Origin: Oikopleura dioica
Taxonomy: Eukaryota > Animalia > Chordata
NCBI GenBank assembly: GCA_907165135.1
Contig: OU015566.1
Coordinates: 682,001 to 746,000 of the forward strand
DNA length: 64,000 nt
Direction: 5' to 3'
The translations under genes were made by a program, and so were the position numbers. This document shows positions 1,394 to 25,604 of this stretch, piece after piece. The notes beneath the pieces are model-generated. The model had not been told where the DNA came from. It saw nothing but the letters and a program-made list of their open reading frames with translations, and did no database searches. Within the stretch, counting starts at the first letter, position 1. Every line of letters begins with the position of its first letter.

Positions 1394-2629
1394 ATGATTA
1401 GTAGGACAACGAAATTTTACGAGCTTTTTGTGACGTTAAGTGTCCTTGTGGGCTCTGGCAAGCCCAGATTATCTTTTTTTCTGGCACGAAAACAAAGGAA
1501 AAAATACACGAAACAGAAACAAAATCAGATTTTTTTTCAAAGAAAAAAATTTTCAAATGTTGGTTTCTCTTATTTTTGGATTTTGCGCAGGAGAGATTTT
1601 GTATATCAAGAATTATGGCGAAAAGATTGATTTGAGGCGATTTGCGAGCTGTCATATTTATGATATGGAGCTGACGAAAACGATTACTGTCAAGTTGTCA
1701 GAAGATGAAGACGTAGAGTTTTTGGATATAAACGATGTTCAAGTTGGAATTGGTCACGTGCCTCTACCAATCCAGGTAAAATTTGGGGTTTTCGGCACGA
1801 GTCGACAAAAATTTCGAGAAATTTTGCGTTGGCGGCAATTCGGCCACTGATTGGCCGGCTAGCAAAATCAAGGCTTCTTATTGGTTGAAAATATCCACGC
1901 AAAATTTGTCGAAATTTTTTGTCGATTCGTGCCGCCTTCCCAAAATTTTGGGTTTCTTGATGCATGAATAAGGGTTTCGAGCCGATAAAAGTAAGAAAAA
2001 TTTTAAGAAACCGGTCGGCTACGGAAAACATCTAATCCAATGGATCACCGGCGAAAATACTTCAAAGAAAATTTCCTCCGAACTCGAAAAGCAGCTCATT
2101 TGCACAAAAGAAGAAGACGACTGCTTCATCCGGGTGAATTTCAGCGGCAAAAATGTGCTCAAAATTCGAGGAATTTCACAAAGCTTCTGTCAAAACGCAT
2201 TTATTACGACTTCAAAGCGACCAGCTCATGATCTTTTAAAAAGTCATCAGCCGGATTTCAGAGTTGAGAATCATCAGCAAGAAAAGGAGTTTTTCTCGAT
2301 GGTATGCCCTTAATTTTGTTGTAAAGGAGGGATAACATGTGTTTTTCCAGGGACTGATTATTGGAATTTCTTCGTCAGTGGCAGTTTTCTTTATTTTGGG
2401 ACTCCTGGTCGTCATTTTCATTCGACGACGTCAAAAAAATCTTGAAAAGGAGGAAGAATCGGCATGGAACGCTCAATCGTCTGGCGAATCAAGAAGAGTG
2501 GAGCATATTTACGAAGAAATAGACGATTCCCTCATCGGGCAAAATCCTTCTTATCATGTTTACGACACGCTAGAATATGCAACGACAGGGAGAGCACAGA
2601 CAAATGGATATGACCACCTTCAACTGTAA
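1394..2629 (+). CDS. Host multi-exon single-pass membrane protein with tyrosine-motif cytoplasmic tail
   Basis: Last exon encodes TM GLIIGISSSVAVFFILGLLVVIFI, then RRRQK and a tail with YEEI, YDTL, YDHL; upstream exons inferred from GT/AG sites; the 5' structure is uncertain. Confidence 0.5.
1779..1965. repeat. Dispersed MITE-like repeat with paired CCAAT/ATTGG cores
   Basis: Imperfect inverted arms (GTCGACAAAAATTTCGA / TCGAAATTTTTTGTCGA); similar segments recur near 26700, 33930, 46200, 47350-47470, 48260-48600 and 49720-49870. Confidence 0.45.
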
Positions 2630-2673
2630 AAAAATGCAAAAAACTGTAAATAAATTCAAAGGAAACAGACCTT

Positions 2674-3116
2674 AGTAGTATGTACATAAGCTTTTTTCAA
2701 TGATGGAGATAATGTAAACAAAGAAAGGTAAATAATTATAAATATTTATGAAATATATAAACAAGTTAAAATATTTATTTTAAACGCAAACATATGATAA
2801 ATATTAGTAAACTAAATATAAAATATAAACATGAGTCATCCAAACAAAGGACGGTCAAAAATAACAAAAAATTTCTAGAAGGTTATTTGAATAACCAAGT
2901 TATTCAAATAACTTGTTATTGAAATAACTTGTTATTCAAATAACTTTTTATTACGATAACCGTTATTCAAATAACCTTCTAGAAACTTTTATGTTATTTT
3001 TTACAAAAACTGTCCCTTGGATAAGACTTTTCAAATATAAACATGAGTAGGGTTTGTATCGGGAAGGCGGCGCGCGGCGTGGCACTTTTCACCCAAAATG
3101 ACGGAAATCTATTTCG
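2674..3116 (+). repeat. Left terminal inverted repeat of the Polinton
   Basis: Reverse complement of 24668-25110; the outer part appears identical by eye, the inner 100-150 bp has scattered mismatches. Confidence 0.95.
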
Positions 3117-3974: not shown

Positions 3975-4380
3975 AGAGTGTTATTGGAATCAGGGATTCG
4001 GAACGGAGTATTGTTGGGCATAGACCAGCTTTTGAAAGTATTACTTGGCTCAGGCCGATTCCAAAGGTATTTTTGGGATCAGGCCGATTCTGAAAGGTAT
4101 TTTTGGGATCGGGGCGATTTCTGAGGTATTTTTGGGATCGGGGCGATTCCTGAGGTATTTTGGGATCGGGGCGATTTCTGAGGTATTTTTGGGATCGGGG
4201 CGATTTCTGTGGTATTTTTGGGATCGGGGGCGATTTCTGAGGTATTTTTGGGATCGGGGCGATTTCTGAGGTATTTTTGGGATCGGGGCGATTCCTGAGG
4301 TATTTTTGGGATCGGGGCGATTCCTGAGGTATTTTTGGGATCGGGGCGATTTCTGAAAGGTATTTTTGGGCTGAGGCGAT
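3975..4380 (+). repeat. Tandem array of about 29-bp units (GAGGTATTTTTGGGATCGGGGCGATTTCT), about 11 good copies plus degenerate upstream copies
   Basis: Directly visible periodicity; same core as 17951-18112 (inverted) and 11150-11420 (degenerate). Confidence 0.9.
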
Positions 4381-4698: not shown

Positions 4699-6589
4699 AT
4701 GGCTAAGTGCTTGAAAATTCTCAAGAAAATACAAAAAGCAGATATTAATTACCGCAATGAAACAGACCGACTTGCTAGCGAGTTTGAGGACGAACTCGCA
4801 AATGTCGAGGACAAAGAACCAGTCCTTCGTGATTTACGTAAGTAGAGAAAAATACGATTCTTATTACCTTATCATATTTTCAGGGGGGACACTTGATATG
4901 ACTGATAAAAGCTCCCAGTGCAACCTCAGGCTCGAACACATTCTCGAAGAATATAGCAGTGAGATCGATTGTGACGTTTCAAGTGCTTATGAGTCTTCCT
5001 CTGAAGAGGACTCGTGTGATGAAGAATGGGTTCCTACCACACCTCCCCACACCCGAGGTAATTCCCTTCCAAAAGCTCCCCGGAAGGAAAAACTCTCATA
5101 TGTGAGGTCGAATCTTCGCGGTATATCATGGTGTTTACGAAAGAGTTTTAAAACTTTCTAGGCGCGAGACGGCGTTTGGTCTTTGACTCCGAGGAGGAAA
5201 CCAAGTCTTCAGAGGAAGCGCGTCAGGATAAACTCAAGCAGAAAAAAGCCCATTCCTCAAAGAGACTGCGAGAGGAAGAAGCCGCGGAACAACCTTCAAA
5301 ACGAGTCCGCCGAGAAGCTGTCCAACCAAGAAACGTTTTCGATGACATCGAGGATGAGCAAACTCGTGATAGTTTCGGTTATACACGACACGAAGAAAAG
5401 CAAGAGAATACCGCTGACGACTTAGAAGAAAACAATCAACAGGAAGATGAGTCCGAAAATGAGCCTGATGCTTTAGAGAGTGACGATTATTCAAACGTTG
5501 AGGACTACGAGTCGGAAGAAGAAGTCTTTCAGCCTGCTCATGATGTCAATAACAAAGACCATCACTCAGGACAAGAAGGTGAGTTGAGCTCTCAACTGAT
5601 CGAAGACACCCCTGGACCAAGCTCTCGACTGATCGAAGACACACCTGGACCAAGCTCTCGACTGATCGGGGACGCTCCATCACCAAGCTCTCAACTGATC
5701 GAAGACACACCTGGATCAAGCTCACGACTGATCGGAGACGCTCCTACACCAAGCTCTCAACTGATCGAGGACACTCCTGGACCAAGCTCTCAACTGATCC
5801 AGGGCAGTCCTGAATCAAGCTGTCGACGTCAAGATGATCAGCAGAAGTCTGAAAAATGGCAACTCTGGAGTCCATCCCAATGGGAAATCATCGGTAAATC
5901 ACCTCCACCTGACTACGATCCTAACCAGCGCTTCGGGAGAAGCGTTATCCGCTTCGCCGCACCTGCTGAAAACAAAAACGATCAAGGTTAGAGACATTTT
6001 TCTACCAGATTGTTTATCATGATTCAGTTATTGACTTAACAGGCTCTCCTGATCGGGAAATCAACGTCGATGGTCATATGAAAGACGGGTCAGAAGGTAT
6101 CTATTATTAAAAAAAAGATATATAAATATATTTTCATAGTTATCGATCTCACTGATACCTTTGACGACGAGGACAGTGTTGACGATGACATGATCAATGG
6201 GTTGGTTGCCGAAGCAGAGGAGAGAGAAAGACAGCAACTTCAATCAGAACTGGAAAATCCTTCACGCGGAGGTACTCCAGACCAGGGGTGGATATTTTCA
6301 TTTCAACTCCTCATTTCAACCCAAATTTGACCATCCTGATTGGTCGAGAACGGGAATTTCGGGGTTTGAAATGAGGTTTGAAATCAAAATATCCACCCCT
6401 GCTCACGACACGATTATAGAGCATTGTCTCAGCCCATACCTCTTAGGCGAAACACTTGACGACTGTTTCAGATTTGGGATTCTCACAAAAGATGCAATAG
6501 AATTTATCGAAGAGACCATCTATGAACAAGAAGACTACCCTGATCCTTCTCCCACAATTTCGCCCATAAAAACTTACACTCAACTTTAA
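4699..6589 (+). CDS. Polinton accessory gene: spliced, acidic, disordered, probably nuclear protein with 7 x 11-aa repeats
   Basis: ATG at 4699; GT-AG introns 4838-4883, 5121-5161, 5987-6042 and 6097-6139 join frames; repeats SSQLIEDTPGP at about 5587-5817; NLS-like KRLR/KRVRR; VIDLT motif. The junction to the last ORF (6197-6589) is unresolved. Confidence 0.6.
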
Positions 6590-6809
6590 TTTCTACCTTC
6601 CTTTATGCGTTCCTTGGTGTTTCCTTTATCTTGTGTTTGTCTTTATTTACTCATGTTTACCGAAAAAAAAAAAAATTATAAATAAAAATGGTGTCTAAAA
6701 AACTTTGACTTTGTCATTTTGTTGCCAAGTTTGAAAAAAGCACTGATAATAAGCACTGAAAAGTCCATAAATATGCAACGATAAGGTCCACAATTATTCT
6801 TAAAAAAAA

Positions 6810-7079
6810 ATGAATCGCTCACTTCCACTTTCGGAAGAGTTTCCTTTTTTCGATGTCATCTGCGAGCTCAAAGATCAACTTCTTTCAATCCAGCATCGTT
6901 TTTTTACTGGGGTTTCCGGCGTTGCCTTCATTGGCCTTATCATCACAGTTGGCTTCTACACAAAATTGTGTATGATCATCTGTGAGAAAAAGAAGAATGT
7001 TTCCCGAAAAAATCCTGACCGACGCGAGAATATCACGATTTCAGAACCTTTTGATGCCGTCCATAATACTCTTGTTTAA
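6810..7079 (+). CDS. Polinton accessory small single-pass membrane protein (89 aa)
   Basis: ATG ORF; hydrophobic FFTGVSGVAFIGLIITVGFYTKLCMIIC followed by KKKNVSRK; ends ...NTLV; AATAAA immediately downstream. Confidence 0.7.
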   Translation: MNRSLPLSEEFPFFDVICELKDQLLSIQHRFFTGVSGVAFIGLIITVGFYTKLCMIICEKKKNVSRKNPDRRENITISEPFDAVHNTLV

Positions 7080-7453
7080 ATAAAAGAAACAAGTAGATAT
7101 GTGACCGAGTTTCTTTTTTATTTCAATTAAATTATTGAGGAACTGTTCATTTGAATTATAATGGCAGGTTATAATAGAGGGAAGAACTTTTTCAATAAGT
7201 GGCGCAGGTATCTTTAAGAACTCAGAAGAAAATGAACTGGTGTGATAAGCGGTTTCGAAGGTTATTAACGAGCGGATTTATCAATTATCAATAGCGTCAG
7301 GAACAAACTGGAGAAGATTTTCAATGAAATGGTGATTGTCGGAATCAACGAGGAGAGGAGACTTGTTTTTATGCTTCGGATGATAATAATTGTTGCTTGA
7401 GCTGGAACCGTAAAAAGAGCTTATTTCTGGTCGGAAAAGAGACGTAAATTTAC

Positions 7454-7888
7454 CTAGTTTGTGTCCATATCGTCAGATTTAGCAGAGCCGGAAGTTTCCA
7501 TTTCCTCAGTCTGATCCTCCGTGGTAGTATCCATTTTAGACGCGATCTTTTCTTATAGAGAGATAAGTTATTTTTCTTTCACGATTGAAAAATACCTGTT
7601 ACGATTTTTTGCAACTCTGCAAGTTGACCGTTAGTGATCTTGATGATGAAAGTCGAAGCTGCTTGCTTCGCATCTATTATGTTTCAGAAATGAAAAGATG
7701 AAAATAAGAGTACCTAATTCAGATTGAATTTTGATGAGGGCAGCAAGATCTCCTTCTTCGATTTTGCTCATGAGATCTTTCTCTTCATCCGTATCTAGTA
7801 TCTTTGTTTGATCTTGCAGGTTTATCATCTTGGTTCTCGTGGGAATAGGTGGTTTCTCACGCTTATCAAAAATGTGTAAAGAATGCAA
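7454..7888 (-). CDS. Polinton accessory gene, partial spliced model; 5' end unresolved
   Basis: Frame ...KILDTDEEKDLMSKIEEGDLAALIKIQSEL continues across two short GT-AG introns into DAKQAASTFIIKIT... and EKIASKMDTTTEDQ...DTN-stop; no clear start codon found. Confidence 0.35.
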
Positions 7889-8701
7889 GTTTTTGGCGCC
7901 TGGCCGAGTGGAGAATCTGTAGCAGCGCGCGCTTTACTGTTACTCGCAGTCTTAAACGCGTGGGGATGAATCGGCGAATCGGTGGCGAGAACCGCAGGGC
8001 GCGCGAGTTTTGAGCACGCTCCTTCACCCCTCGAATGCGTAGGCAATAAAATCAAACCAACTGATGCAGGTTCATCACCAGATCATAACTTGAAGTTGCC
8101 ATAAAGCGCAAACAACATCAAGAGAGAATCAACCTTTTTATTTTCTTTATTTAAAACTGATTGACTTAAAATGACTTAATATTTTAATCTAAAGAGAGAT
8201 TCTTATAGAGACGACAAAATGTTCCACGCGAAATTCGTCCACATGCGACTAATCCGAAACAAGGTATGAAAAAAAAAGATGAACAGATAAAAAAAATTCT
8301 AATATAGCGTAACAAAGGCTTTGGACGATAGAGTGCATTTCAAGAAACAAGAAAGGTTTAATTTTGCGTTTATTTTTTATTTACAAACAATAAGACAAGG
8401 CGATATGAAATAAGAGTTAAATTAACTTTCAAAGACTTCTTCCACTTGCCAAAATTATAACAACCGATATGAATTGACCGGCAAATTGACGCTCAAAGAC
8501 TGTTTTCGACTTTTTATCTGACCTGCTTTACAAATTTTTTTCTTTCGCTGAAGATAATTGAACTGGGGTGTAGATTTTGATGTAAACTTGGTTTCAGGCA
8601 GTTATTCTTTCAAGTAAACTAAATTCATCTCAAAATCTACACCCTATTTTTAATAAAATCAGCTGAAAATTACGTTAAAATAAAGTCGAAAAGAGTTAAG
8701 A

Positions 8702-9304
8702 ATGTTTTTTTTCCCAACAATCCACCCTCCTTTGACGTTCCCCGGTCACACAACGGACACAACATCTACAACCTCTCTTGGATCAACGTCGACCACTCAC
8801 ACATTTTCGACCGTTACCAATGGTACCTCAACGAATACAATCGAGCCCGACGAAATTTTCAATGGAAAAATCATCGCTGTCGGAATAGCGGGTAAATTTA
8901 GTTACATAGGAAGATCATTCTCATTTTCATTCTAGCCCCAGTTTCGGTTATAATAGTGATCATGCTCGCAATCCTCATTTACAAAAGACGAGTTCGAATA
9001 ACCTCCTTCTGGGTTGACTTACGGAGAGTGCTTGTTTTGCATTGCTGTGATAATGAAGGTAGTTAGATCAGCCTATCTTATTACTAAAAAAGTCTTCTTA
9101 GAAGAACGCGACCTCGAATTGCAAAACAGACGCGCAGACGAAGAACGAATGATTCTGAATGAAAGACGGCAAAAGAAAGACGGACGGAAACCGACTGTGG
9201 ATAGCAACACGCAGACAGAACAGCAAGAAGATGACAAAGAGGACAAGAAGGACGAATGGAGGTGCCCTCAAGTATCCTGGCAAGAATGGATCGACAGTTG
9301 GTGA
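8702..9304 (+). CDS. Polinton accessory single-pass membrane protein A with Thr/Ser-rich ectodomain and no signal peptide
   Basis: Introns 8892-8935 and 9059-9101 give MFFFPTIHPP...TTDTTSTTS...NGTS...IIAVGIAAPVSVIIVIMLAILIY-KRRVR...LHCCDNEEERDLE...WQEWIDSW; the TM helix spans the first splice junction. Confidence 0.8.
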
Positions 9305-9409
9305 TTGAAAAAGGACTGTGAAAAGAATGTTTTTTGAATGATTAAATTAGAAAGAAAGTGAATAAATAACATCTTTTTGCATAAAAGACTGAATCGGTAA
9401 TCTGGGCTA

Positions 9410-9698
9410 ATGGACAATTACGAAGGCGACGACGTTCACGATTCGGACCTTGAGCAGCAAGTCAACAAGCAAAGAGGTAAAAAGAAAACAGAAAACTCTT
9501 TCATTTTTAACTTAATTAAAAAAAGGTCTCACTTTCATCGAATCCTCGATCCTTGTCTTTCTCGCGATTCAATGCGTTGGTCTTCTCGCTACATTCATCA
9601 TCTACCTTGCTGGACTGGCTTTCGCGATTTTCCCCTTCATCAACCTTGTCTGGTTCTTGTTCCGTCGACCCAGAACCCCGACAATGTTTAGGCTGTGA
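9410..9698 (+). CDS. Polinton accessory hydrophobic hairpin (2-TM) protein B, about 79 aa
   Basis: Intron 9477-9525 gives MDNYEGDDVHDSDLEQQVNKQRGLTFIESSILVFLAIQCVGLLATFIIYLAGLAFAIFPFINLVWFLFRRPRTPTMFRL. Confidence 0.7.
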
Positions 9699-9810
9699 AA
9701 GAAACTCAGATCGCTAGAGATTGCATAAAATTCTTTCATAAATAAGACTGAAAATCGTGACGCGATGGACGACTCGTCGGAGTTTGACCAAGATTATCGA
9801 TGGGACTACT

Positions 9811-10248
9811 ATGATGAACGAACCGTCTCCGAGCTATGCCGTCTTCGTAAGAATTAATGAAAAACAGAATTTTACATAAATAGTCGGTAACGAGTCGGCA
9901 AATATCACCTCTACACGGACACCACCGACTGCTACGTCATCCATTATCAATGGAACTTCAAACGTCAACCAACTTGGTAAAAGTAGATAGACAAAAAGAT
10001 TCTTACCTTGAATAGACGAAAACAACACGCCAAAAACCTTCTCCATGGTTGAAATGATCGTCATCACCCTCCTCGCCTTCAACACTATTCTCCTTCTCAC
10101 CTTGATCCTCATCCTCTGCCAGAAGAAGAAGAAGAAGACACCTAAGCCAACAAGAAACGGTAATCTCTATCATTCCTTTTCGCCTTCATAAAATATATTC
10201 TTAGTTCACTACACGCCGATCTCAGCACCACTTCCACTCGACATTTAA
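9811..10248 (+). CDS. Polinton accessory single-pass membrane protein C
   Basis: Introns 9847-9883, 9977-10015 and 10160-10204 give MMNEPSPSYAVFSVTSRQ...NGTS...MVEMIVITLLAFNTILLLTLILIL-C-QKKKKK...HYTPISAPLPLDI. Confidence 0.7.
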
Positions 10249-10334
10249 ACCTGCCACTTAAAGGAGAAAAGCTGTCTTTGAATACTGATATGAAACTAAA
10301 ACTAGAATATTGTAGACAGTTTTTCCATTCAGAA

Positions 10335-10883
10335 ATGTTCTTTCCATTCTTCAAAGGATTCAGTGGGCCAAATCGAAACAATGGCCGAAACGGAGAGGGA
10401 TTCCCGGATCAAGGCAGACAGCAAGACGATCAGAGCAGAAATCATTCGAACCCAGAGGGTGAATGTACAAATCCAGACGATGACTTCGAATTCGATGTCG
10501 ACATACAAAAAGGACGTGTGCGCACGAATGATCGCGTCATCGCTATTCTCATCCTATTACTTTTCTTCTATATCGTCTACGAAAGTAAGAAATCAAATCT
10601 TTCAAAGGAGTTCTAAAGTTTTCAATAGACGGAAGAAATAGACAGAGACAACGTGAGCCCCGAAGAATTCGAATGATTCGGAATCCGGATCGAATCGAAG
10701 AGTTGGAGAGTGAGGACGAAATGGATATCACTCAGCGCCCGGCAATTGAGGATCATCAAGCTGAAGGTAAAATAAGCTTTCTTCCAAACAGAAAATAAAC
10801 GCAAATTAGAGGCCAACAGACCACAACGCCGACGGACACGCACTCAACCCTTACAAATCTGTCACAGACAGAAACGCTATTAG
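10335..10883 (+). CDS. Polinton accessory single-pass membrane protein D; 3' end uncertain
   Basis: MFFPFFKGFSGP...RVIAILILLLFFYIVYE, a GT-AG intron, then NGRNRQRQREPRRIR...; a second short intron follows; the terminal exon frame is ambiguous. Confidence 0.6.
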
Positions 10884-11149
10884 GTAAGAAAACAAATTCG
10901 CAGGCAAAAACCTAATCATTTATTTAGATTCATCCAGAGCAAGACGCAGCTTCTTCAAACCGCCAAGAAAAACATTCGTGATAACAAGCTTCCTGTAGAA
11001 AAATGTGCCTTAAAAACAAAAATAAAAGACAAAATAGCTCTCAAAGATAAAAGGTTCTCATCTTTATTGCAAATAAAATGACAGGAAAAATATATTTTAT
11101 AGTTTACGGATTGACTCAAGCAAATAAAGGGCCTTGTTCGATGAAGAGC

Positions 11150-11420
11150 AGTCTTCAGGAATTGACTGGACTCAGGACAGTTTCCGACGGTATTACTGAA
11201 CTGAGACCAGCTTTTGGAGGTATAACTAGGCTCGACCAGTATCCAGAGGTATTACTCGGCTCAGACCAGTTTCCAGAGGTTTTACTTGGAACAGGCGAGT
11301 TTCCAGAGTTATAACTGAGCTAAGGTCAGTTTTTGGAGGTATTTCTAGGCTCGGACCAGTTTTTCGAGGTTTTCATAGGATCAGGCCAGTTTCCGGAGGT
11401 ATTACTGAGTTTAGGACAGT
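11150..11420 (+). repeat. Degenerate 30-bp tandem array (GAGGTATTACTCGGCTCAGACCAGTTTCCA-like)
   Basis: GAGGT...G(A/G)CCAGTTT recurs every 30 bp; resembles the unit at 3975-4380; all minus-strand frames checked contain stops. Confidence 0.7.
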
Positions 11421-11734
11421 TTTTGAGTTTTCAACAGAGGTTTTCTTGCTCTCGGACCTTGGTCTTTTTCGAATTTCACAAAAGGTCTTTTGGAATTTCC
11501 AGAAAAGGCTTTTGCGAGTTCAAGAATATCAGTAATCTCAGTAAATTAAGTTTGCGAATATTTTAATTGAATACTACGACTCAAAAGGGCCTTATACTTG
11601 AGAGACTAAATTGTAAAGCTGAGATAAAGAAACACAAGATTTTGTTTAGATCTAATGAATTTATTTGTCGAAATTTGCACAAGAAATTGGATGAAAAAAG
11701 AACAAAGAAACTAAGGAGACGACAATGACGATGA

Positions 11735-12336
11735 TTACAGGCGTCGTTCAGCTCGGATGATTTGGCGGATATTTCGGTATTCGAAATCAGTCCGGCATAT
11801 AGGGCATCTGTTGTTCCTTTCTTCCTCAGGTTCCGCTTTGAGCGTTCTTAGACAATCAGCGCACGTGTAGTGAAGGCAGGGTGTAGGATCCTAAAATTTG
11901 TTATCAAAATATCAGTCTTGCTAACTACCATTTGTTTGTTTTCTTCCCAGCATATCACGCATTTTTTCTTTTCATCCTCCGAGATTTCTCGTGATGCAAG
12001 CTTGATTTGGCGAGATCTTATTATAATTGTACCAATGCAGGCACCCGGAGAAAAAGTTCGACAAAGTAATCTCGGGAGAAGCGGTGATCGAGCAACAAAA
12101 CGCTCCTCGGCGAATTCATCTGCGTTATCCATAAATTCTTTCCATTCAGATTTTGTATAAGGATAGTACCATCTCCCGAAACAGTCTTTACATTGTCCAC
12201 CAGGCACTGAATTTGTTTCAAGCTGAGCACGAGTGACTTCTCTGAATGTCGGAGATAGACTTGTCTTCTTACGACATATGCGACAGTAAATTATCGCATC
12301 TTCGTCTGTTATTTTGACAAGCTTAACAGCGAGCAT
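11735..12336 (-). CDS. Polinton-encoded RING-HC (C3HC4) E3 ubiquitin ligase-like protein with an N-terminal CxxC...CxxC zinc motif
   Basis: Removing intron 11891-11928 (or 11891-11925) gives CVICWEENKQMDPTPCLHYTCADCLRTLKAEPEEERNNRCPICR; the N-terminus has CRIC...CKDC. Confidence 0.85.
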
Positions 12337-12480: not shown

Positions 12481-15400
12481 ATGAAACGCTTTAATTTCTT
12501 TTTTCCGGGAATTAATCCTTGGATAGCTTTAGGAGAGATACAAAAACACAAAGAGAAATTCAAGAAATTTTTCAAAGATGGTAAGCTTTCTGACAGAAAA
12601 TTTCTAGCACACTGTCAGTCATTGACAATTTGTAATTCTTCTAAAACAAATGAAGAAATTATTGCGTTTTATCAACTTGAAATTGTGCGGGTAAGATCAA
12701 TGTCGAAACAGTCAATCAAGATCAAATTTGCTGACGATAATTTGATAACTAAAACAAGCATCTTTGTGGAAGAGAAGGAAGATTGTTTTTATTACTACAC
12801 GTTTGAAACTGTTTTGGAAAAATTAGTGAGAGCAAAAAAATGCTCATCGAAATTAGATTTTGCTTTCAAGATTGACGGGTTTGATATTTTTGATGGACCA
12901 AAAGATGTATTTGCAAGAAATCTTTCAAAAATTTCTGCTGAAATGAAGAGAGAAATCAATTTCTACGAGTATCTTTATATTGACACTTTTCATAAATTCA
13001 ATATTTTACAGTCTTTTAACCCAAAAAACTCTCTCCAAGAAAAGCCGTTGAATTTTCTTGTCAAAAAGCAAGATCTTGTCTCATCAAGCGAGCCTCTTCA
13101 GCTTAGATTTTTGTATAACATGGATGTTTTCTCCAATGTTTATAAATGCGAAAACCCTTCTTGTGGATACGAAAATGTTAAGAAATCAAATTTCGAGGCA
13201 CATGTTAAAGCTTGTCAACACAAAAAAGAAACGATACCACTCCAATGTCCATATGGCGATACAATTTATCCGATCGAAATAGCAATACGAGCTGGTTACC
13301 TTTCAGAAAGGATGAGAGGCTTTAGAAAGACTCGTTTCGGTAGACCTTGAATAACAAACTCTCCAAATTAAAAAATTTTAGTCACTTTCGACATCGAGAC
13401 AATGGAATGTCCAGTCAATACAACAAACAAAGTGACGACGATTCACGCTGAACTTCGCTTGCTTTCGATTGCTATCGGAAGTAACTTTGGCTACGAGAAA
13501 TTTTTCATTCGTAGATGTGACTCAAACGAAGGAGCGCAGCAACTCGTTGAAAAATTTCTTGACGAGCTTGAACTTCTTGCTTCAAATGAAAGAAATTATC
13601 TTCCAAGTGAGATTTTAGAAGCCATTCAAAAACTTGATGGAATTGACATAAAATTGGAGCCTGTTTCGATCAGGAAAAGAATAAGGTTTATAAAAAGAGA
13701 GCTCGAAAATTATTCAAAGATGAATGTCTTTGGATTCAATAGTTCTGGTTTTGATTTAAAAGTTTTAGCTCCATATATAATTCCTTTTCTTAAGACAAAG
13801 TATAAAGCGAAATTGGTTTGTATAAAAAAGGGAACCCAATATTTCACTATTTCCACCCCTTTTTATCAGTTTAAAGATGCTCGGCTATTTAGTTCTCCAA
13901 CAAACTTAGCTGGGTACTTAAAACAAGGTGGTATCACTGAGGTAAAGTCAATTTGGCCGTATGAAAAATATCACAGCGTGTTGGAAATTGTCAATGACAG
14001 GACATTTCCACCAATTGAGGACTTTTTCTCGAGCCTAAAGAATAAGGGAATCGATGAGGAAGAGTATGAAAAGTGCAAAAAGGAGTTTTATCAAAATCAA
14101 GCGATCAATCCGAATTATTCAATGGGACATTGGCTCCGCCATTATAACATCATGGATGTCACCCCATTTGCCAAGGCCATCGACAACCAGTTTCGTGTCT
14201 TCTTTGATGTTTTCAAGATCGATCCCTCATTCTGCATGAGTTTACCGAAATTCGCAATGGCTTGTGTTTTCCAGCGCTACTCCAAAGCTTCGCCCCTGAC
14301 ATGTAAGCAATTTTCTTATGGATATATATTCTTATTATTTATATCTAGACTCGTTTCACAGAAACTTCAAAAAAGAGCACCAACTTTTGCGTGAAAATAT
14401 TATCGGTGGGCTGGTTAACGTTTTTTCTCGCTACACTGAGCTCCGCCCGGATGTTGATGCCCCTAAAAATGCCAAATTTGCCCCGAACGGAGATCCCTTC
14501 ACGCGTATCGTCTTTTTGGATTTTAATGCCTTGTATTTGTTTGCTCAAAAGATGAGCTTACCGACAACGCCAGGTAAATTCAAAATGCAAAAATAAAGGT
14601 GAAATCGAAGAATGTTTAGGCATTACTTGGGAGAAGTTTGACAACGCCGTTTTCCGCAAAAGGATCATGTCTACGGGAAACAGTTTCGCAGCCCTGCAGT
14701 GGCTAACATTCATTGACGAATTTAGCCCCTTGCTTGTTCAATCAAATGGTGAAAGAGTTCCTTTGGAACATCAATATTTTAGGGGTGAACATCAAGTAGA
14801 GAACTTCAAAATCGACGGATATGCTAATGTCGATGGTCAACATCATTTTTTTGAATTTCTTGGATGTTATTACCATACTCACTGTGTTGACTGCAATCCA
14901 GGAGGAGCTGACAAGGAATGGGAGAAAAAGTTTCGTCGATTGAATGAACTAGGTCAGGTTCATGTAATGCGCGAGTGTGAATGGAATCAAAGAAGAAATG
15001 AAGCTCATTTGACAAAAATTTCCAGATATTGGGGTCATATTTTCAAATCGAAAGAAACAGAAAAAAGTCTGATAGAGGGTATAAAAAATGATCAAATTTA
15101 TGGATTCATAGTTGCTGATGTAACTTGTCCCAAAGAAGTATACGAGAAAATATCGTATCTCAATTTTCCACCAATTATAAAGAGAATGAAAATTACAGAT
15201 CAGCTTCTTAGTCCATACATGAAAAGCCAATTTAGTAAGCTTGGTAAAAATTGTGATCAGGAAACAGTTATTCAGACATACAATGGTAAGAAAATATTTC
15301 TTCTCACAACTCTGGCTAAATTCTATCTTGATATTGGTTTAGAGATAACAAATATAAGATCATTTACACAGTATAGAGCGTCAAAATCTTTAAGCGAATA

Positions 15401-16395
15401 TGCTGATTCTATAACAAATGGCCGAGTCAGCGCTCTAGACGAGAATCCTCCTAATAAAGCCCTTGCTTTGGCTTTTAAAACGATCGGTAACTGTGGAGGA
15501 TTCGGTAAAGCCATCGAAGTTGTTGATCGACCAAGTCTCAAATTTGATGATGAAAAACAACTAGCTAGATCAATAATTAAACCAACATTCAAATCAACAC
15601 AGCCTCTCTATCAAGAAAACGGAGAATACTCAATTTCAGAGGTTACTTTCGAAAAAAAGCGAATCAAAGACGACAAACCGACTGTTCTTGGAGTTGCTAT
15701 CCTTCAAAATTCAAAGCTTCACTTTCTGTCCTTCGTCTACAAATTTCTTCACAAGTATTTGAAGCCAGGATCATACAAGCTGAATTATTGTGATACAGAC
15801 AGTCTCGCAATATGTAAGTTATTATTAAATATTGCTTGTCTTATAAATATATCTAGCTTTTACCAGGAGTGAAGAATGTATCGACACGAATCGTTCAAAA
15901 ATGATGACTTCATTCTTACCTTGTGTTCACCAAGAGTTGAAATACGAGTTTCTCCAAGAATGTGGCAAATGGCTTGTTCTTGAAAACACCAACCTAAACG
16001 AGAAAACTCCTGGTCTCTTAAAATGTAAGAACCATTTTCTTAAAAGTAGAATTCAAATCTTTCTAGCTGAATGGGAGACAGATTCGGGAGCACTTGTTTG
16101 CCTCGGAAACAAAATGTATTTCGGCTATGATCCGAAAAATGACAAGGTTAAGCGATCAACAAAAGGAGTTCCGCATAACCAAGAGTTAAAACTGCAAGAA
16201 TTCCTTGATTGCTTGTATGGAAACATAGAAACAAATAATCGATTCACTTTGCGAACTCTACGCCCTACTACCAACAATGTTGTTAAACGAGTTTCAACTG
16301 AAAAAGTTCTACTTTCAAATTTATTTGTAAAAATGCGCGTCATGGATGATGGCATTACCTGCGAGCCACTGACCCTCGACGGCAAGCCGCTTTAA
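12481..16395 (+). CDS. polB: Protein-primed family B DNA polymerase (pPolB), 6 exons, about 1231 aa
   Basis: GT-AG introns 13340-13381, 14303-14348, 14574-14619, 15814-15856 and 16025-16066 give one 3696-nt frame with ExoI VTFDIET, ExoII FGFNSSGFD, motif A DFNALY, motif B KTIGNCGGFGK, motif C YCDTDS and an inserted DGY...FEFLGCYYH nuclease-like domain. Confidence 0.95.
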
Positions 16396-16508: not shown

Positions 16509-17054
16509 ATGCCATTCTATCAAAGTGAAAGAGTAGACCTAGAAGCAATTCGCAAAGAGTATGGTGGTACATACATTCCACTCTCTAAGGAGGAGCTTGA
16601 ATACTTTGAGAAAACGGAGAAGATGGGACAACTTCAGAATCGTGTTATCATTGCTCCTCCGAAACCAGGTCGGATCGTAGAACATGCTCACGTTAGACTA
16701 TTGATTAACAAGAACTTCGACTTGTTTAACGTTGTGGATGATCTATTCGAATTCATCTCACCGCCTTTTCGTTTTGGAATCGATTTTGCGTTTTTGCTGG
16801 AAAACCCCGTCACAGAAGATCCTGACTCACGTTTTCGATTTGTTTGGCCTCAAATCTCGACCTCTCTTCCAATAGAACCTAACCTTATCAAAAACAAGTC
16901 ATCGAAAAAAGAATTCTTGCAGAACATTCCAGATTGGACTGACATCCCTCGCCTCGTCGACATTACCCATCAAAATCAGAGCATGTTTCGAAAAAGCGGA
17001 TACAACATCACAAAACTCTTGACCTGTAGTCTTTACATAACAAAGATGAAATAA
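16509..17054 (+). CDS. Polinton ORF, 181 aa; candidate stand-alone terminal (priming) protein
   Basis: Clean ATG ORF downstream of pPolB; PFRFGIDFAFLLENP...RFRFVW...P.LIKN...FRKSGYNITKL resembles, from my recollection of the family, the N-terminal segment usually fused to Polinton pPolB. The product call is inference. Confidence 0.55.
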   Translation: MPFYQSERVDLEAIRKEYGGTYIPLSKEELEYFEKTEKMGQLQNRVIIAPPKPGRIVEHAHVRLLINKNFDLFNVVDDLFEFISPPFRFGIDFAFLLENPVTEDPDSRFRFVWPQISTSLPIEPNLIKNKSSKKEFLQNIPDWTDIPRLVDITHQNQSMFRKSGYNITKLLTCSLYITKMK

Positions 17055-17159
17055 ATGCATTTTAGTCTCAAAATAATTCAGAACACTTTCAAAGTTTGCA
17101 TGGCTGAGACTAATCGGAAGGGTCTAGATTCAGTTTGCCCGTTTATAGACTGTCGAGGA

Positions 17160-17900: not shown

Positions 17901-17950
17901 CTGAGGTGAGTCTTTTTTGATTTTCTCATCGCCTAAGTCCAGTTATATCT

Positions 17951-21158: not shown

Positions 21159-21578
21159 TCACCAGAGTTGAGAAAGTTTGAAAAGAAGTAATTGATCGTT
21201 AACAGTAAAGGAATGAGTAAAGAGAGAAGAAAGTTTCTGTCGTGAATAAAGAGAACGGAAAATAACGAAGAAGCAAACATAAAAACCACAATAAAATGAC
21301 GAGTCTGACTGGGTTCTTTTATAAAAAAAGGTTTCTTTATCACCAAAAAAGTCAAAAAGCTGCGTAGGATATTTTTTAAGGCCTAAACTATCAAATATTT
21401 CAATTTTACTCTTTATAATTCGTAATGAGATCCAGTGAGAGCCTTTTGAAATTTCAGGCGATAAGTTGACAACAATAAAAGAAGGAAAATTTTCAATTTT
21501 GGGTAAAGTATCAATGGAGTAAACACCTTGAAAATGTTCAACTCGTTCTAAACGTTTCGCAATTAGGTATGAGTTCAT
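21159..21578 (-). CDS. Adenain-like cysteine protease (139 aa)
   Basis: GSHW, IFDSLG, Q.....YCG: His/Asp/Cys triad plus oxyanion Gln; ATG at 21578 overlaps the upstream stop. Confidence 0.93.
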   Translation of the reverse strand: MNSYLIAKRLERVEHFQGVYSIDTLPKIENFPSFIVVNLSPEISKGSHWISLRIIKSKIEIFDSLGLKKYPTQLFDFFGDKETFFYKRTQSDSSFYCGFYVCFFVIFRSLYSRQKLSSLFTHSFTVNDQLLLFKLSQLW

Positions 21579-21790
21579 GCTTTTTTCTTTTTCGATGATT
21601 TCTTTGATTTTTTCAAATCTTTTGTTGTTTGATTTCGTTTTTTCTTTGTTTTGGTATTTGGATGTTTTCGACCTGGTGTTAGCTTGAGTTTTGTTGGACC
21701 GTTTTTTGACTTTCGTTTGCCCGCGCCGGATTGAGATTTTGGAAACCATTTTTTTGGACGATTTTCAAGCGAGGCAATGATTGTTTTCAT
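21575..21790 (-). CDS. Small Lys-rich putative virion core (DNA-condensing) protein, 71 aa
   Basis: Very basic; has SQSGAG, resembling a protease maturation site; ATGA-coupled at both ends. Confidence 0.65.
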   Translation of the reverse strand: MKTIIASLENRPKKWFPKSQSGAGKRKSKNGPTKLKLTPGRKHPNTKTKKKRNQTTKDLKKSKKSSKKKKA

Positions 21791-22173
21791 TCTCTTGTTG
21801 TGATAAGTATCTGGAGTGAAAAGTGTTGAATGATGTGTTGACTGCCTAAGTCGATTGAAAATCGTGTATCCCGCCAGTTATATATGTTTAAAGGGAAGGT
21901 AACGGAGCGTTGGTCGGAGAAATGGCACCACCTGTCGTTTGGACGGATTTGACCCATCATCAGCGTATTCGGTTCTCCATAGCAAGAAGCAATTGAGTTA
22001 CACGTTATGAAAGCAATGTCCATGTCACGCGGAGTCGTCATCAGATTACAGACAGCGCTTATAATTTGAACATTGTACTCTTGATTTTTTTCAAAGAAAA
22101 TTTCAGGAACTTTCAGCTCCTTGGTCATTGTCTCGAAAAGATTCAAGATCATCTGCAACGAAGTTAAGCTCAA
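21787..22173 (-). CDS. Probable minor capsid (penton-like single jelly-roll) protein, short (128 aa)
   Basis: Beta-rich pattern FITCNSI...VTFPLNI...RFSIDL...FSLQILIT and position between integrase and core/protease; the assignment is inference. Confidence 0.45.
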   Translation of the reverse strand: MSLTSLQMILNLFETMTKELKVPEIFFEKNQEYNVQIISAVCNLMTTPRDMDIAFITCNSIASCYGEPNTLMMGQIRPNDRWCHFSDQRSVTFPLNIYNWRDTRFSIDLGSQHIIQHFSLQILITTRE

Positions 22174-23320
22174 AGTAGTACTTTATTCCAGGTTGTCTAT
22201 TTCCTTCTTCGTCTGCAATTTTATACCAAACTACTCCGGCTCGTTGTCTGATATCGATTATGACGTAAATTTTGTCTGTCCAGTTTTGTGTATATCCTTT
22301 TTCGAAGATACCCTTCTCTATTTTTACTCGGACAACGTTCCCAATTTTGAGTCTTGGTTTGACTTTCAAATCGAAATCCGGGAAGAGATGAGCGAAGACC
22401 TGTGCTCTATTTTCATGTGAGACTTGGCTTGGTGCCATTCCAATGGCTCGATGAGGAGTGGAATTGTAGCCTTTGACTATTTCTGGAAGAACATCGATCC
22501 AATTTTTAGTTTTGTTTGATTTCATAAACAGCTCCACTCGTTTTTTGATGGTTTGATTGACTCGTTCTGCCATACTCGCTTTCAATTTTGTTTTGATACT
22601 ATAGTGATGCATTCCATAGCGATCAAGAATTTTTTTTACATTGACATTGTAGAATTCCAAGCCTTCGTCTGTGATAAGAGAATTAGGCCATTCGAGAAAA
22701 TCTTGAAATATATCATTGAGAGCGTTAGCAACATCGATTCCTCCTTTTGTTTTTACAGGTCGTGTCCATATAAAGCGAGAGAAGCAATCGATTATAAGTA
22801 GAACATAAGCATACTGACGATTTGAAAATTTGAATTTCTTGTATTCAATCAAGTCACCCATAAAAATTTTGAATGGCGAGTCGACTATGATTTTTCTTCT
22901 GGGAAATCGTTTTTTAGTTATTCGACGGTGAGTACTATGAGTTTTATTCTGCCTGAGAAACTCCGCTACTTTCGCTGAGAACGCTGGAGCGCTTGCAACG
23001 TTTTCGTACAGGGCTTGAATCTGATCCGTCACTGTCTTCTTCTGTTTTTTCAGAGTCGCTTGTTGATTCACTTGATTCTTTACCTGAGCTTGAGCTTGCT
23101 GAGGATGTTTCACTTTCGGAGGAAGTTGATGGTCGTCTTCGCTTGGATTTCTTTGTCTTTTTCTTTGATTTCTTCTCGGGGACAGATCTCTTTCGTCGTT
23201 TTCTGGTTCTTTTCCTCTCAACCTCCGACTCTGACGAGTCATCTGTAAAGCTGTCACATCTTGTTTTTGCTTTAACCCTTGATGTTTCGATTGTTTTGCA
23301 CGATGAGTATTTTTCGTCAT
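22103..23320 (-). CDS. int: Retroviral-type (rve) DDE integrase of the Polinton
   Basis: MGDL...IDCFSRF, ITDEGLEF, AERVNQTIK, YNSTPHRAIGMAP, FEKGYTQNWT; catalytic D-D-E intact; no chromodomain seen. Confidence 0.95.
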   Translation of the reverse strand: MTKNTHRAKQSKHQGLKQKQDVTALQMTRQSRRLRGKEPENDERDLSPRRNQRKRQRNPSEDDHQLPPKVKHPQQAQAQVKNQVNQQATLKKQKKTVTDQIQALYENVASAPAFSAKVAEFLRQNKTHSTHRRITKKRFPRRKIIVDSPFKIFMGDLIEYKKFKFSNRQYAYVLLIIDCFSRFIWTRPVKTKGGIDVANALNDIFQDFLEWPNSLITDEGLEFYNVNVKKILDRYGMHHYSIKTKLKASMAERVNQTIKKRVELFMKSNKTKNWIDVLPEIVKGYNSTPHRAIGMAPSQVSHENRAQVFAHLFPDFDLKVKPRLKIGNVVRVKIEKGIFEKGYTQNWTDKIYVIIDIRQRAGVVWYKIADEEGNRQPGIKYYFELNFVADDLESFRDNDQGAESS

Positions 23321-24071
23321 CTTTCTTCGCTGTTGCTTCGAAAGTATTTTCTCTTTCGATAATGTTGAAGTTTTGCTTGAAATCGTTGAAGGGTACGATG
23401 CAAGCCTTCATACCGGTGACTGAGTAGACAACAGGATATTTTGAGAATATATCCGTGTACAGCCGGTAGCTTGAGGCATGACCTCGAGGCGATTGATCAA
23501 GAAACATGTAAGGATATGATTTGTTCTTGATATCTTCGGACGCTCTCTTGAACGCTTTTTGCAGCCCAGCTGTATTGCAAACTCTCTTATTGATTGTTCC
23601 GTCAAGACAGTTTCGGCAGAGAAACGTTGCGTTACAGTTCAGACGAATGTTACGACCAAATTTTCCAGCAGCATAATTATTTTGAGTCATAATCATAACG
23701 TTCAGGCTTCGCTTGCCGCTTGTGACTCGAAAAAGATGATCTATAGCTTGACTTTGAATCGCTTCTTCATAAAGATCATCAAGAACAATCGTTGTATGGG
23801 GCATCATCTCATCAATATCATCCTGTGATGGGATACCGACGCGATAGCTAACAGGAATTCCAAGATCATCCCACTGAACGGGTTTTTCTTCAAGGAAACA
23901 GGGATAAAAATACAGGACCCGCTTTGTTTTCTTCTGAAACAGATGCCTGTTCAGAAGAACTTGCTTTGCAATATAAGTTTTTCCAGCACCAGATGATCCA
24001 CTTAGCAATATACGAAAAGGGTATGCAAACTCTTTTTGAGGAAGAATTTCTCCGCTTATCATCGTTGACAT
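22944..24071 (-). CDS. FtsK/HerA-family (A32-like) genome-packaging ATPase with a Lys/Ser-rich C-terminal tail
   Basis: Walker A GSSGAGKT, Walker B IVLDD, MTQN and RNIRLN motifs. Confidence 0.93.
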   Translation of the reverse strand: MSTMISGEILPQKEFAYPFRILLSGSSGAGKTYIAKQVLLNRHLFQKKTKRVLYFYPCFLEEKPVQWDDLGIPVSYRVGIPSQDDIDEMMPHTTIVLDDLYEEAIQSQAIDHLFRVTSGKRSLNVMIMTQNNYAAGKFGRNIRLNCNATFLCRNCLDGTINKRVCNTAGLQKAFKRASEDIKNKSYPYMFLDQSPRGHASSYRLYTDIFSKYPVVYSVTGMKACIVPFNDFKQNFNIIERENTFEATAKKDDEKYSSCKTIETSRVKAKTRCDSFTDDSSESEVERKRTRKRRKRSVPEKKSKKKTKKSKRRRPSTSSESETSSASSSSGKESSESTSDSEKTEEDSDGSDSSPVRKRCKRSSVLSESSGVSQAE

Positions 24072-24667: not shown

Positions 24668-25110
24668 CGAAATAGATTTCCGTCATTTTGAGCGAAAAGC
24701 GCGACGCCGCGCGCCTCCTTCCCGATACGAACCCTACGCATGCTTATATTTGAAAAGTCTCATCATAGGGTCAGTTTTTGTAAAAAATAACATAAAAGTT
24801 TCTAGAAGGCTATTTGAATAACGGTTATCGTAATAAAAAGTTATTTTAATAACAAGTTATTTCAATAACAAGTTATTTGAATAACTTGGTTATTGAAATA
24901 ACCTTCTAGAAATATTTTGTTATTTTTGACCGTCCTTTGTTTGGATGACTCATGTTTATATTTTATATTTAGTTTACTAATATTTATCATATGTTTGCGT
25001 TTAAAATAAATATTTTAACTTGTTTATATATTTCATAAATATTTATAATTATTTACCTTTCTTTGTTTACATTATCTCCATCATTGAAAAAAGCTTATGT
25101 ACATACTACT
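24668..25110 (-). repeat. Right terminal inverted repeat of the Polinton
   Basis: Reverse complement of 2674-3116; ends ACTACT followed by the TSD GACCTT. Confidence 0.95.
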
Positions 25111-25604
25111 GACCTTTTTGCGAACTTGAAAAAAAGGAGGATGCAGAAAATACCTTGCAAAAAAAAGTTGGCAGAGGACTAAGCGTGGCGCCCCGCGGCC
25201 CCTTCTAACCCGGTGATTGATTCCGTAACATTTTCGATTGCACCGCGCTATTGGTGCTCTCTTTTTATCAGCACCCCTCCGCCACACTCCTTCGTGAAGA
25301 ATGAGAGAATTGATAAAATGAATTTTCTTTTTTGAATAATGAGTATGAGAGAATTGGAGTTTTTCGAGAAAGATATGAGAAGAAAAAATGCAATGAGTGA
25401 ATTTTATCATGCGAAAACTTTCTGAATTGTCGTCTGTTTCTGTGATAATTTATGTTTTATAAAATGCTGACAAAAACAAAATCGATTATTATTACCGTAT
25501 TATTGGAGCAACAACTTAAAAACTAAGACGACTGCGTAAAAAATTTTGTCGAAATTGAATAAAATTAAAATCGAAATTGATCAAAATTATTTTTTTTAAG
25601 AAAC

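What the first reader, a model, noticed from the sequence alone, without database searches (positions are those of the whole stretch)
6810..10883. Cassette of small spliced membrane proteins in the viral left arm (FAST-fusogen-like or adenovirus E3-like)
Seen after splicing: at least four signal-peptide-less single-pass proteins (6810, 8702, 9811, 10335) plus a hairpin protein (9410), clustered and co-oriented. Shared design: short N-terminal ectodomain (two start MFF(F)P, two carry NGT sequons and Thr/Ser-rich stalks), one TM, an immediate polybasic stretch (KRRVR, KKKKK, KKKNVSRK, RNRQRQR) and juxtamembrane Cys in three. Established: this layout typifies reovirus FAST cell-cell fusogens, and adenovirus E3 is a cluster of small immunomodulatory membrane proteins. 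Inference: a non-enveloped endogenous virus carrying an uncharacterised membrane-remodelling or host-evasion module that is invisible without splicing.
Basis: partly seen in the sequence, partly recalled or inferred. Interest (0 to 1): 0.85.

Follow-up and report, generated by a model that had tools for sequence, protein, structure and literature searches.

The report
Small membrane genes in tunicate Maverick
A virus-like transposon (Maverick/Polinton) in the genome of the tunicate Oikopleura dioica carries near one end a row of short, intron-containing genes that probably encode tiny single-pass membrane proteins with no known relatives; they look a little like viral cell-fusion or immune-evasion proteins, but no relationship or function is shown.

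Summary
They lie in the accessory arm of a 22.4-kb Maverick/Polinton (443-nt terminal inverted repeats, 6-bp target duplication, retroviral-type integrase, adenain-like protease) in Oikopleura dioica. The pattern of a membrane segment followed by a basic cluster is strongly concentrated on the + strand here: 5 of 10 hits in the window against 0.18 expected. The predicted frames carry the local codon-usage signal in 8 of 13 pieces. Splices for 9410 and 9811 are unverified. No relatives were found outside these near-identical copies. No Pfam, PDB or viral-fold match appeared, so none to FAST or adenovirus E3 families. FAST-defining ectodomain and amphipathic endodomain features are absent. Best reading (about 0.5): lineage-specific accessory genes for small N-out/C-in membrane (glyco)proteins, comparable to E3 in genome organisation only, function unknown. 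Main rival (about 0.3): non-functional or decaying frames. I left out fetching DNA of other copies and searching with joined exons.

The parts
2668..2673 (.). Target-site duplication, left copy (6 bp, same six bases as 25111-25116)
   Evidence: Read
2674..3116 (+). Left terminal inverted repeat of the Maverick/Polinton element
   Evidence: 443 nt, 96% complementary to 24668-25110
4056..4370 (.). Array of 29-nt tandem repeats. The same family occurs inverted at 17945-18100, and a related core occurs at 11171-11425
4757..5991 (+). Two ORFs (134 aa and an acidic 271-aa ORF with 33-nt repeats). No family; part of the accessory arm
6197..6695 (+). 130-aa ORF followed by a T-rich tract and a poly-A run. 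The tract reads as a hydrophobic segment plus KKKK in two frames and is probably low complexity
   Evidence: structure model poor (pLDDT 42)
6810..7079 (+). Protein A: unspliced 89-aa ORF with one membrane segment and a basic cluster. AATAAA overlaps its stop codon
   Evidence: no homologue and no family
8702..9304 (+). Protein B: three exons (8702-8891, 8936-9057, 9101-9304) with introns of 44 and 43 nt. It is 171 aa: Thr/Ser-rich N-terminal part, membrane segment, KRRVR, charged helical tail
   Evidence: Public models P0153 (chr1.g92, exon bodies identical to the window) and P0152 (PAR.g9455, 168/171). AF2 model:
9410..9698 (+). Acidic start, then two adjacent hydrophobic segments. Splice not verified
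9811..10191 (+). Four sequons, membrane segment, Cys, five Lys. Splices not verified; it may be joined to E
10335..10798 (+). Protein E: exons 10335-10584 and 10628-10798 with a 43-nt intron. Acidic N-terminal part, short membrane segment, Arg-rich run. AATAAA overlaps the stop codon
   Evidence: Public model P0001 (PAR.g9453) is identical over both exons; the model then runs on into polymerase pieces and is probably chimeric:
11738..12336 (-). RING-finger gene whose RING domain is divided by a 38-nt GT..AG stretch. This is a second kind of intron-bearing gene in the same arm
   Evidence: (two halves of zf-C3HC4_3)
12481..16395 (+). Protein-primed-type DNA polymerase B candidate, 1276 aa summed over its open pieces. 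Its frame is interrupted four times: one gap with two in-frame stops and three changes of frame
   Evidence: The assignment rests on motifs read by eye; no tool confirmed it
21159..21749 (-). Adenain-like cysteine protease, open, with the invariant His, Glu, Gln and Cys columns present
   Evidence: (adenovirus proteinase 7e-7)
22103..23320 (-). Retroviral-type integrase, open
   Evidence: rve, 1e-9; foamy-virus integrase core
22944..24071 (-). P-loop ATPase candidate with an acidic/basic tail. It overlaps the start of the integrase ORF
   Evidence: only weak P-loop matches
24668..25110 (-). Right terminal inverted repeat
25111..25116 (.). Target-site duplication, right copy

Best explanation
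Region 6810-10883 is part of the accessory (non-core) arm of a Maverick/Polinton integrated in Oikopleura dioica.

Shown:
- The element is bounded by 443-nt inverted repeats and a 6-bp duplication, and carries an integrase and an adenain-like protease.
- The arm between the left repeat and the polymerase holds co-oriented short frames, each with one membrane-type segment followed by a basic cluster.
- Two of them (B and E) match public spliced gene models with 43-44-nt introns.
- B exists in two genomic copies.
- The frames carry a coding-type codon signal.

Inferred:
- They are transcribed in about three units, ending at the AATAAA signals at 7079, 9361 and 10794, so C, D and E may share one 3' end.
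- The products insert into the endoplasmic reticulum membrane as signal-anchor proteins, N-terminus outside and C-terminus in the cytosol (positive-inside rule). B and D would be glycosylated on their Thr/Ser-rich, sequon-bearing N-terminal parts.
- Through their basic and charged tails they would change trafficking, the cell surface or membrane integrity while the element is expressed.
- This makes the arm an accessory module comparable in genome organisation to adenovirus E3. It is not homologous to E3 and is not a FAST-type fusogen.
For: - Element identity.
- Species and public gene models. The annotation was made with AUGUSTUS using RNA-seq hints, and the median intron is 49 bp (PMC8008620).
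- Motif clustering.
- Codon-frame test.
- AATAAA overlaps the stop codons of A and E, as it does at the ATPase and another core-side ORF. The background is 27 of 767 open segments.
- A neighbouring RING gene is also divided by a 38-nt GT..AG stretch, so spliced genes do occur in this arm.
- Nematode Mavericks are reported to carry intron-bearing cargo next to a terminal repeat (bioRxiv 10.1101/2022.07.12.499685).
- Adintoviruses are reported to encode membrane-active accessory proteins (PMC8502044).
Against: - I have not seen any transcript or peptide. A gene model may be ab initio.
- There are no homologues beyond two near-identical copies, so purifying selection is not shown. The three differences in B could be neutral.
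- The polymerase frame of this copy is interrupted four times, so the copy may be decaying.
- ORF-length and splice-compatibility statistics are weak.
- D's membrane segment and Lys run sit in a pyrimidine-rich tract followed by a purine-rich triplet run.
- The E model in the public set is evidently chimeric.
Confidence: 0.5

Rival explanations
1. The frames are not functional genes. They are chance or decaying open frames in the variable arm of an ageing element, and the public models are gene-predictor output.
For: - There are no relatives outside near-identical copies.
- None of ten ORFs is in the protein collection as an exact product.
- The statistics on ORF length are weak.
- The polymerase frame is interrupted four times.
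- The terminal repeats are only 96% alike.
- The E model is chimeric.
- T-rich plus A-rich DNA imitates the motif at 6544-6695.
Against: - The motif clusters on one strand.
- The codon-frame signal equals that of known coding sequence and is absent from the opposite strand.
- Intron lengths of 37-49 nt match the species (PMC8008620).
- AATAAA lies at the stop codons.
- B was modelled identically in two copies.
Confidence: 0.3
2. They are passenger (cargo) genes picked up from the host or another organism, as described for nematode Mavericks. They would be real membrane proteins with no role in the element's own cycle.
For: - Introns are present, which core Maverick genes are reported to lack (10.1101/2022.07.12.499685).
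- An intron-bearing RING gene lies next door.
- The position is between a terminal repeat and the core genes.
Against: The annotated O. dioica proteome is in the searched collection, yet the only hits for B and E are the element's own copies. No donor gene is visible.
Confidence: 0.1
3. One or more of the proteins are FAST-like cell-cell fusogens, by convergence.
For: They are small, have no signal peptide, have one membrane segment and a juxtamembrane basic cluster, and B and E have aromatic, proline-containing N-terminal tips. FAST layout is taken from PMC7830690.
Against: - No family or fold match.
- No start suited to myristoylation.
- Ectodomains are 33-66 residues and are Thr/Ser-rich with sequons, or acidic.
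- No amphipathic helix follows the basic cluster (largest helical moment 0.46 or less next to the membrane).
Confidence: 0.04
4. They are small structural membrane proteins of a lipid layer inside the particle, as in membrane-containing relatives of the double-jelly-roll capsid lineage. The basic tails would face the DNA.
For: Co-oriented clusters of very small single-pass proteins with basic tails are typical of such viruses (my own knowledge, not tested here).
Against: Sequons and Thr/Ser-rich parts, introns and long charged tails are unusual for such proteins. No capsid gene of this element was confirmed by a tool.
Confidence: 0.06

Closest known systems
Accessory or cargo region of Maverick/Polinton elements (nematode Mavericks, Widen et al., bioRxiv 10.1101/2022.07.12.499685; adintovirus accessory genes, PMC8502044)
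   Same: Both are a variable block between a terminal repeat and the core genes. Both hold intron-bearing, lineage-specific genes, and membrane-active accessory proteins are known in the group.
   Different: The block here lies on the polymerase side, not the integrase side. Its content is a row of orphan single-pass proteins plus a RING gene, not proteases, kinases, PLA2-type or gasdermin-type proteins. No donor gene is visible.
Adenovirus E3 region (small membrane proteins, including the type III glycoprotein known as adenovirus death protein). Recalled from my own knowledge; no sequence was fetched or written.
   Same: Both are a co-oriented cluster of small, dispensable-looking membrane proteins in a virus lineage that shares the adenain protease. 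B and D have an N-terminal glycosylation-type part, a signal-anchor and a basic tail.
   Different: There was no Pfam Adeno_E3 hit. Most E3 proteins have signal peptides. The genome position differs. The host lacks the vertebrate immune receptors that E3 proteins are known to target (my own knowledge).
Reovirus and rotavirus FAST proteins (p10, p14, p15 and relatives), layout as reviewed in PMC7830690
   Same: Similar size, one membrane segment, no signal peptide, basic cluster on the cytosolic side, disordered tail.
   Different: No lipid-active short ectodomain, no start suited to myristoylation, no amphipathic helix after the basic cluster, no sequence or fold match. The carrier is a DNA element and not a dsRNA virus.
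Small mucin-like single-pass cell proteins (weak sub-threshold Pfam match to TMEM154)
   Same: Thr/Ser-rich stalk, membrane segment, basic stop-transfer (B: 18.7 bits; D exon 3: 17.1 bits).
   Different: The scores are below the 30.3-bit cut-off and cover compositionally biased parts only, so this is not evidence of kinship.

Membership tests
Maverick/Polinton element | Long terminal inverted repeats | tested here: met
   443 nt, 96%
Maverick/Polinton element | 6-bp target-site duplication | tested here: met
   Identical six bases at 2668-2673 and 25111-25116
Maverick/Polinton element | Retroviral-type (rve) integrase | tested here: met
   Pfam rve 1e-9; PDB integrase cores
Maverick/Polinton element | Adenain-like cysteine protease | tested here: met
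   Profile of relatives hits adenovirus proteinase at 7e-7. Peptidase_C5 is found in 26 of 38 relatives. The catalytic columns are present.
Maverick/Polinton element | Protein-primed family B DNA polymerase | tested here: inconclusive
   Recognised only by motifs read by eye in the ORF pieces. No hit in Pfam, PDB or PHROGs. The frame is interrupted four times.
Maverick/Polinton element | Packaging ATPase and double-jelly-roll capsid proteins | tested here: inconclusive
   Only weak P-loop matches for the ATPase. No match for the capsid candidates.
Reovirus FAST proteins | Small bitopic protein, N-terminus out, no cleaved signal peptide | tested here: inconclusive
   Consistent by hydrophobicity and charge distribution for A, B and D. 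No topology predictor was at hand.
Reovirus FAST proteins | Very short ectodomain with a lipid-active peptide, often N-myristoylated (PMC7830690) | tested here: not met
   Ectodomains are 33-66 residues, Thr/Ser-rich with sequons or acidic. No start residue suits myristoylation.
Reovirus FAST proteins | Juxtamembrane polybasic motif | tested here: met
Reovirus FAST proteins | Amphipathic helix or hydrophobic patch in the endodomain | tested here: not met
   No strongly amphipathic window follows the basic cluster
Reovirus FAST proteins | Sequence or fold kinship | tested here: not met
   Pfam none; viral fold library shows nothing below E = 1 (low-confidence model)
Reovirus FAST proteins | Cell-cell fusion activity | not testable with these tools
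   No activity data
Adenovirus E3 membrane proteins | Match to an Adeno_E3 family model | tested here: not met
   No hit at E up to 5-10
Adenovirus E3 membrane proteins | Cluster of small membrane proteins expressed from shared transcription units by alternative splicing | tested here: inconclusive
   The cluster is co-oriented, and only two + strand AATAAA signals lie between 8702 and 10799. No transcript data.
Maverick cargo as described in nematodes | Intron-bearing genes next to a terminal repeat | tested here: met
   Public spliced models for B and E; divided RING domain
Maverick cargo as described in nematodes | Origin from host genes or transfer between species | tested here: not met
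   No homologue outside the element's own copies

The most novel reading that the evidence does not exclude
A DNA virus-like transposon of a chordate relative has evolved its own FAST-like small fusogens (B and/or E, with aromatic N-terminal tips). These would let a particle-forming or even particle-less element pass between neighbouring cells, such as soma and germ line, by cell-cell fusion.
Probability: 0.04. Interest if true: 0.85.

Novelty: new variant of a known kind. Interest (0 to 1): 0.4.

Why it matters
Mavericks/Polintons are thought to be viruses that also live as transposons, but what they do to host cells is almost unknown. If these genes are expressed, the element would carry its own set of host-membrane proteins, as adenoviruses do with E3. 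That would give concrete candidates for how such elements leave cells, exclude rivals or reach the germ line in an animal with a very compact genome. It would also show that part of the element's coding capacity is visible only when the host's very short introns are taken into account. If the genes are not expressed, the case shows how easily compositional patterns and gene predictors produce 'membrane proteins' in transposon DNA.

Tried and rejected
- ORF-length shuffles and a splice-compatibility score for all GTAAR sites did not separate the region from background, so I use them only as negative results.
- A first codon-frame test was biased by stop codons. I replaced it.
- Pairwise comparison of the exon pieces showed no paralogy beyond membrane-segment composition.
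- The idea that the GC-rich stretch near 7950-8040 repeats the inner part of the terminal repeat was not borne out.
- Rfam found nothing in the element.
- An exact look-up of ten ORFs found none in the collection.
- PHROGs, Pfam and PDB gave nothing for the polymerase, ATPase or capsid candidates.
- The AF2 model of the 6197 ORF was too poor to search with.
- The AF2 model of B is one long helix with disordered ends, so the fold search has little power.
- The extra 'membrane plus KKKK' signal at 6544-6695 is a T-rich tract followed by a poly-A run that reads the same way in two frames. I take it for low complexity.
Full report
**What the window is.** A search with the longest frame of the region returned a public protein of Oikopleura dioica, assembly OKI2018_I69. 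A second search returned two more from the same assembly. The model chr1.g92 (P0153) is identical to the window over all three exon bodies. Its twin on the PAR chromosome (P0152) differs at 3 of 171 residues. The window is therefore most likely chr1 of that assembly, and it is not human.

**The element.** Positions 2674-25110 are a 22,437-bp element.
- It has 443-nt terminal inverted repeats that are 96% alike.
- It is flanked by an identical 6-bp duplication.
- It encodes a retroviral-type integrase (Pfam rve 1e-9; PDB integrase cores).
- It encodes an adenain-like protease. That protease has 2055 homologues in the representative library, the nearest at 57% identity. A profile of these hits adenovirus proteinase at 7e-7, and Peptidase_C5 is found in 26 of 38 relatives. 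The invariant His, Glu, Gln and Cys columns are kept.
- A P-loop ATPase candidate has only weak matches.
- A polymerase candidate I recognised only by motifs. No tool confirmed it. Its frame is interrupted four times, by one gap with two in-frame stops and three changes of frame. I did not decide whether any interruption is a short intron, and I bridged none.
- No tool confirmed a capsid gene.

This is a Maverick/Polinton. That class is already listed among O. dioica transposons (PMC5240408).

**The observation.** All five lack a signal-peptide-like start.

| Protein | Position | Features |
|---|---|---|
| A | 6810-7079 | Complete unspliced 89-aa ORF |
| B | 8702-9304 | Thr/Ser-rich start with one NGT sequon, a membrane segment, KRRVR and a charged tail |
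| C | 9410-9698 | About 45 hydrophobic residues after an acidic start |
| D | 9811-10191 | Four sequons, a membrane segment, one Cys and five Lys |
| E | 10335-10798 | Acidic start, short membrane segment and, after a 43-nt intron, an Arg-rich run |

One detail is weaker than stated. Juxtamembrane Cys are present in A and D, but B's Cys pair is about 20 residues away from the membrane.

**Is it more than chance?**
- ORF length is only modestly unusual, and equally so on the other strand.
- Hydrophobic 19-residue windows are common in this AT-rich DNA: 38 on + and 51 on - in 64 kb.
- Frame compatibility across GT..AG stretches does not discriminate.
- The combined motif (hydrophobic window followed closely by at least four K/R) occurs only ten times in both strands of the window. 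Five of these, at four loci, lie on the + strand of 6500-10900, where 0.18 are expected. The motif was defined after seeing the data.
- With a codon-usage model trained on the window's long ORFs and with stop codons ignored, the predicted frame scores best of six in 8 of 13 exon pieces. That rate equals the rate for known coding chunks (60-67%). Open segments on the opposite strand of the same region are at chance level, 5 of 29 (Fisher p 0.007 and binomial 3e-4).
- AATAAA overlaps the stop codons of A and E, as it does at two core-side ORFs. Only 27 of 767 open segments in the window show this.
- Between 8702 and 10799 the + strand has just two AATAAA signals, one after B and one at the end of E. 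C, D and E may therefore share a 3' end.

**Splicing.**
- The public annotation was made with AUGUSTUS using RNA-seq hints. The species has a median intron of 49 bp (PMC8008620).
It then jumps 2.6 kb into polymerase pieces, which I take for a prediction artefact.
- The gene numbers on PAR (g9453 for E, g9455 for B) leave one model between them. That model would cover C and/or D; I infer this from the numbering only.
- The stretches proposed for C and D are 37-49 nt with GTAA donors, but nothing verifies them.
- By eye, the last donor of D could also join in frame to an AG two bases before E's start, so D and E may be one gene.
- A RING-finger gene on the other strand (12336 to 11738) has its RING domain divided by a 38-nt GT..AG stretch. 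Pfam matches the two halves separately. This arm therefore does hold spliced genes.
For B and E the public proteins served in its place.

**Relatives.**
- A has no homologue in 5.8 billion clusters within the length range searched.
- E has only its own model.
- B has only the two copies.
- None of ten ORFs is present as an exact product.
- The protease shows that relatives of the element are in the collection. The nearest are only 40-57% identical and sit on short metagenomic or run-assembly contigs. The blank for fast-evolving small proteins therefore has limited weight.
- The pieces are not detectably related to each other.
- The three differences in B between copies cannot be set against silent changes without the DNA of the second copy.

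**Test against the named families.**
- No exon piece and neither public protein matches any Pfam family above threshold, and none matches a FAST or Adeno_E3 family at E up to 5-10. The only weak hits are compositional (TMEM154, below cut-off).
- PDB sequences give nothing meaningful.
- The AF2 model of B is disordered over residues 1-48, with one helix at 49-130. The viral fold library gives nothing below E = 1.
- Against the FAST layout reviewed in PMC7830690, size, single span and basic cluster fit. The short lipid-active ectodomain, the myristoylation-type start and the amphipathic helix after the basic cluster are absent.
- I had in mind reovirus p10, p14 and p15 and the adenovirus E3 proteins, including the death protein. 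None came back as a hit, none was fetched, and no letters of them are written.

**Interpretation.**
- The best reading is a lineage-specific accessory module of the Maverick: small signal-anchor membrane proteins, two of them probably glycosylated, made from about three transcription units.
- They would act on host membranes or trafficking while the element is expressed.
- The likeness to E3 is one of genome organisation only.
- O. dioica lacks the vertebrate receptors that E3 proteins are known to target (my own knowledge), so a different role is more plausible. Candidates are exit from the cell, exclusion of rivals, surface masking, or a place in a particle membrane.
- I put 0.5 on 'real accessory membrane proteins', 0.3 on non-functional frames, 0.1 on passenger cargo, 0.06 on particle-membrane proteins and 0.04 on FAST-like fusogens.

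- I did not use look-ups, patterns or accessions to fetch the DNA of the second copy, of related metagenomic contigs or of any animal virus.

**Verdict.** This is a real and non-random feature, partly confirmed as spliced genes, in a known kind of element. The content is new, the function is unknown, and the FAST/E3 label is not earned. Interest is 0.4.

Noticed in passing
window 11738-12336 (- strand): A RING-finger gene whose RING domain is divided by a 38-nt GT..AG stretch. AATAAA lies about 75 nt after its stop. It may be a ubiquitin-ligase-type accessory gene of the element.
   Followed up: partly
window 4056-4370, 11171-11425, 17945-18100, 17159-17898: Three arrays of 29-30-nt tandem repeats share a core, one of them inverted, and they sit between gene blocks. 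There is also a 19-nt unit repeated about 38 times. They may be regulatory or binding-site arrays of the element.
   Followed up: partly
window 7077-7084, 10794-10799, 17050-17055, 22943-22948: Stop codons are overlapped by AATAAA at two small ORFs and two core-side ORFs (background 27 of 767 open segments). This suggests very short 3' ends, as in the compact host genome.
   Followed up: yes
window 10159-10337: The last donor of protein D is in phase with an AG two bases before the start of protein E, so D and E could be one two-span protein.
   Followed up: no
window 2339-2629: A host ORF with a membrane segment and basic stop-transfer ends 39 nt before the target duplication, so the element sits just 3' of a host membrane-protein exon. 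It also shows that the motif occurs in ordinary host genes.
   Followed up: no
window 6197-6695: A 130-aa ORF with no family and a poor structure model is followed by a T-rich tract and a poly-A run that read as 'membrane segment plus KKKK' in two frames. This is probably a compositional mimic of the motif.
   Followed up: partly
window 7100-8600: A gap in the + strand cassette has only short frames, a 100-aa open segment on the - strand (7933-7634) and a GC-rich stretch near 7850-8050. Its nature is unknown.
   Followed up: partly
window 30619-31272 (- strand) and 26044-26685: A phospholipase A2-like ORF (Pfam 1e-8) and an intermediate-filament exon lie outside the element. PLA2-type genes are also known in adintoviruses, so the PLA2 ORF may deserve a look.
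   Followed up: no
window 122-1117; 35076-37171; 39645-41551: There is a 459-nt, 98% foldback pair, a 212-nt, 99% inverted-repeat pair 1.7 kb apart (possibly a small DNA transposon), and a cluster of palindromes.
   Followed up: no
proteins P0003/P0154 and P0004 (relatives of the protease): The nearest protease relatives (40-57% identity) come from metagenomes and sequencing-run assemblies, on contigs of 1.2-13 kb. Related elements or free viruses may therefore be present in environmental samples. The contigs were not fetched.
   Followed up: no
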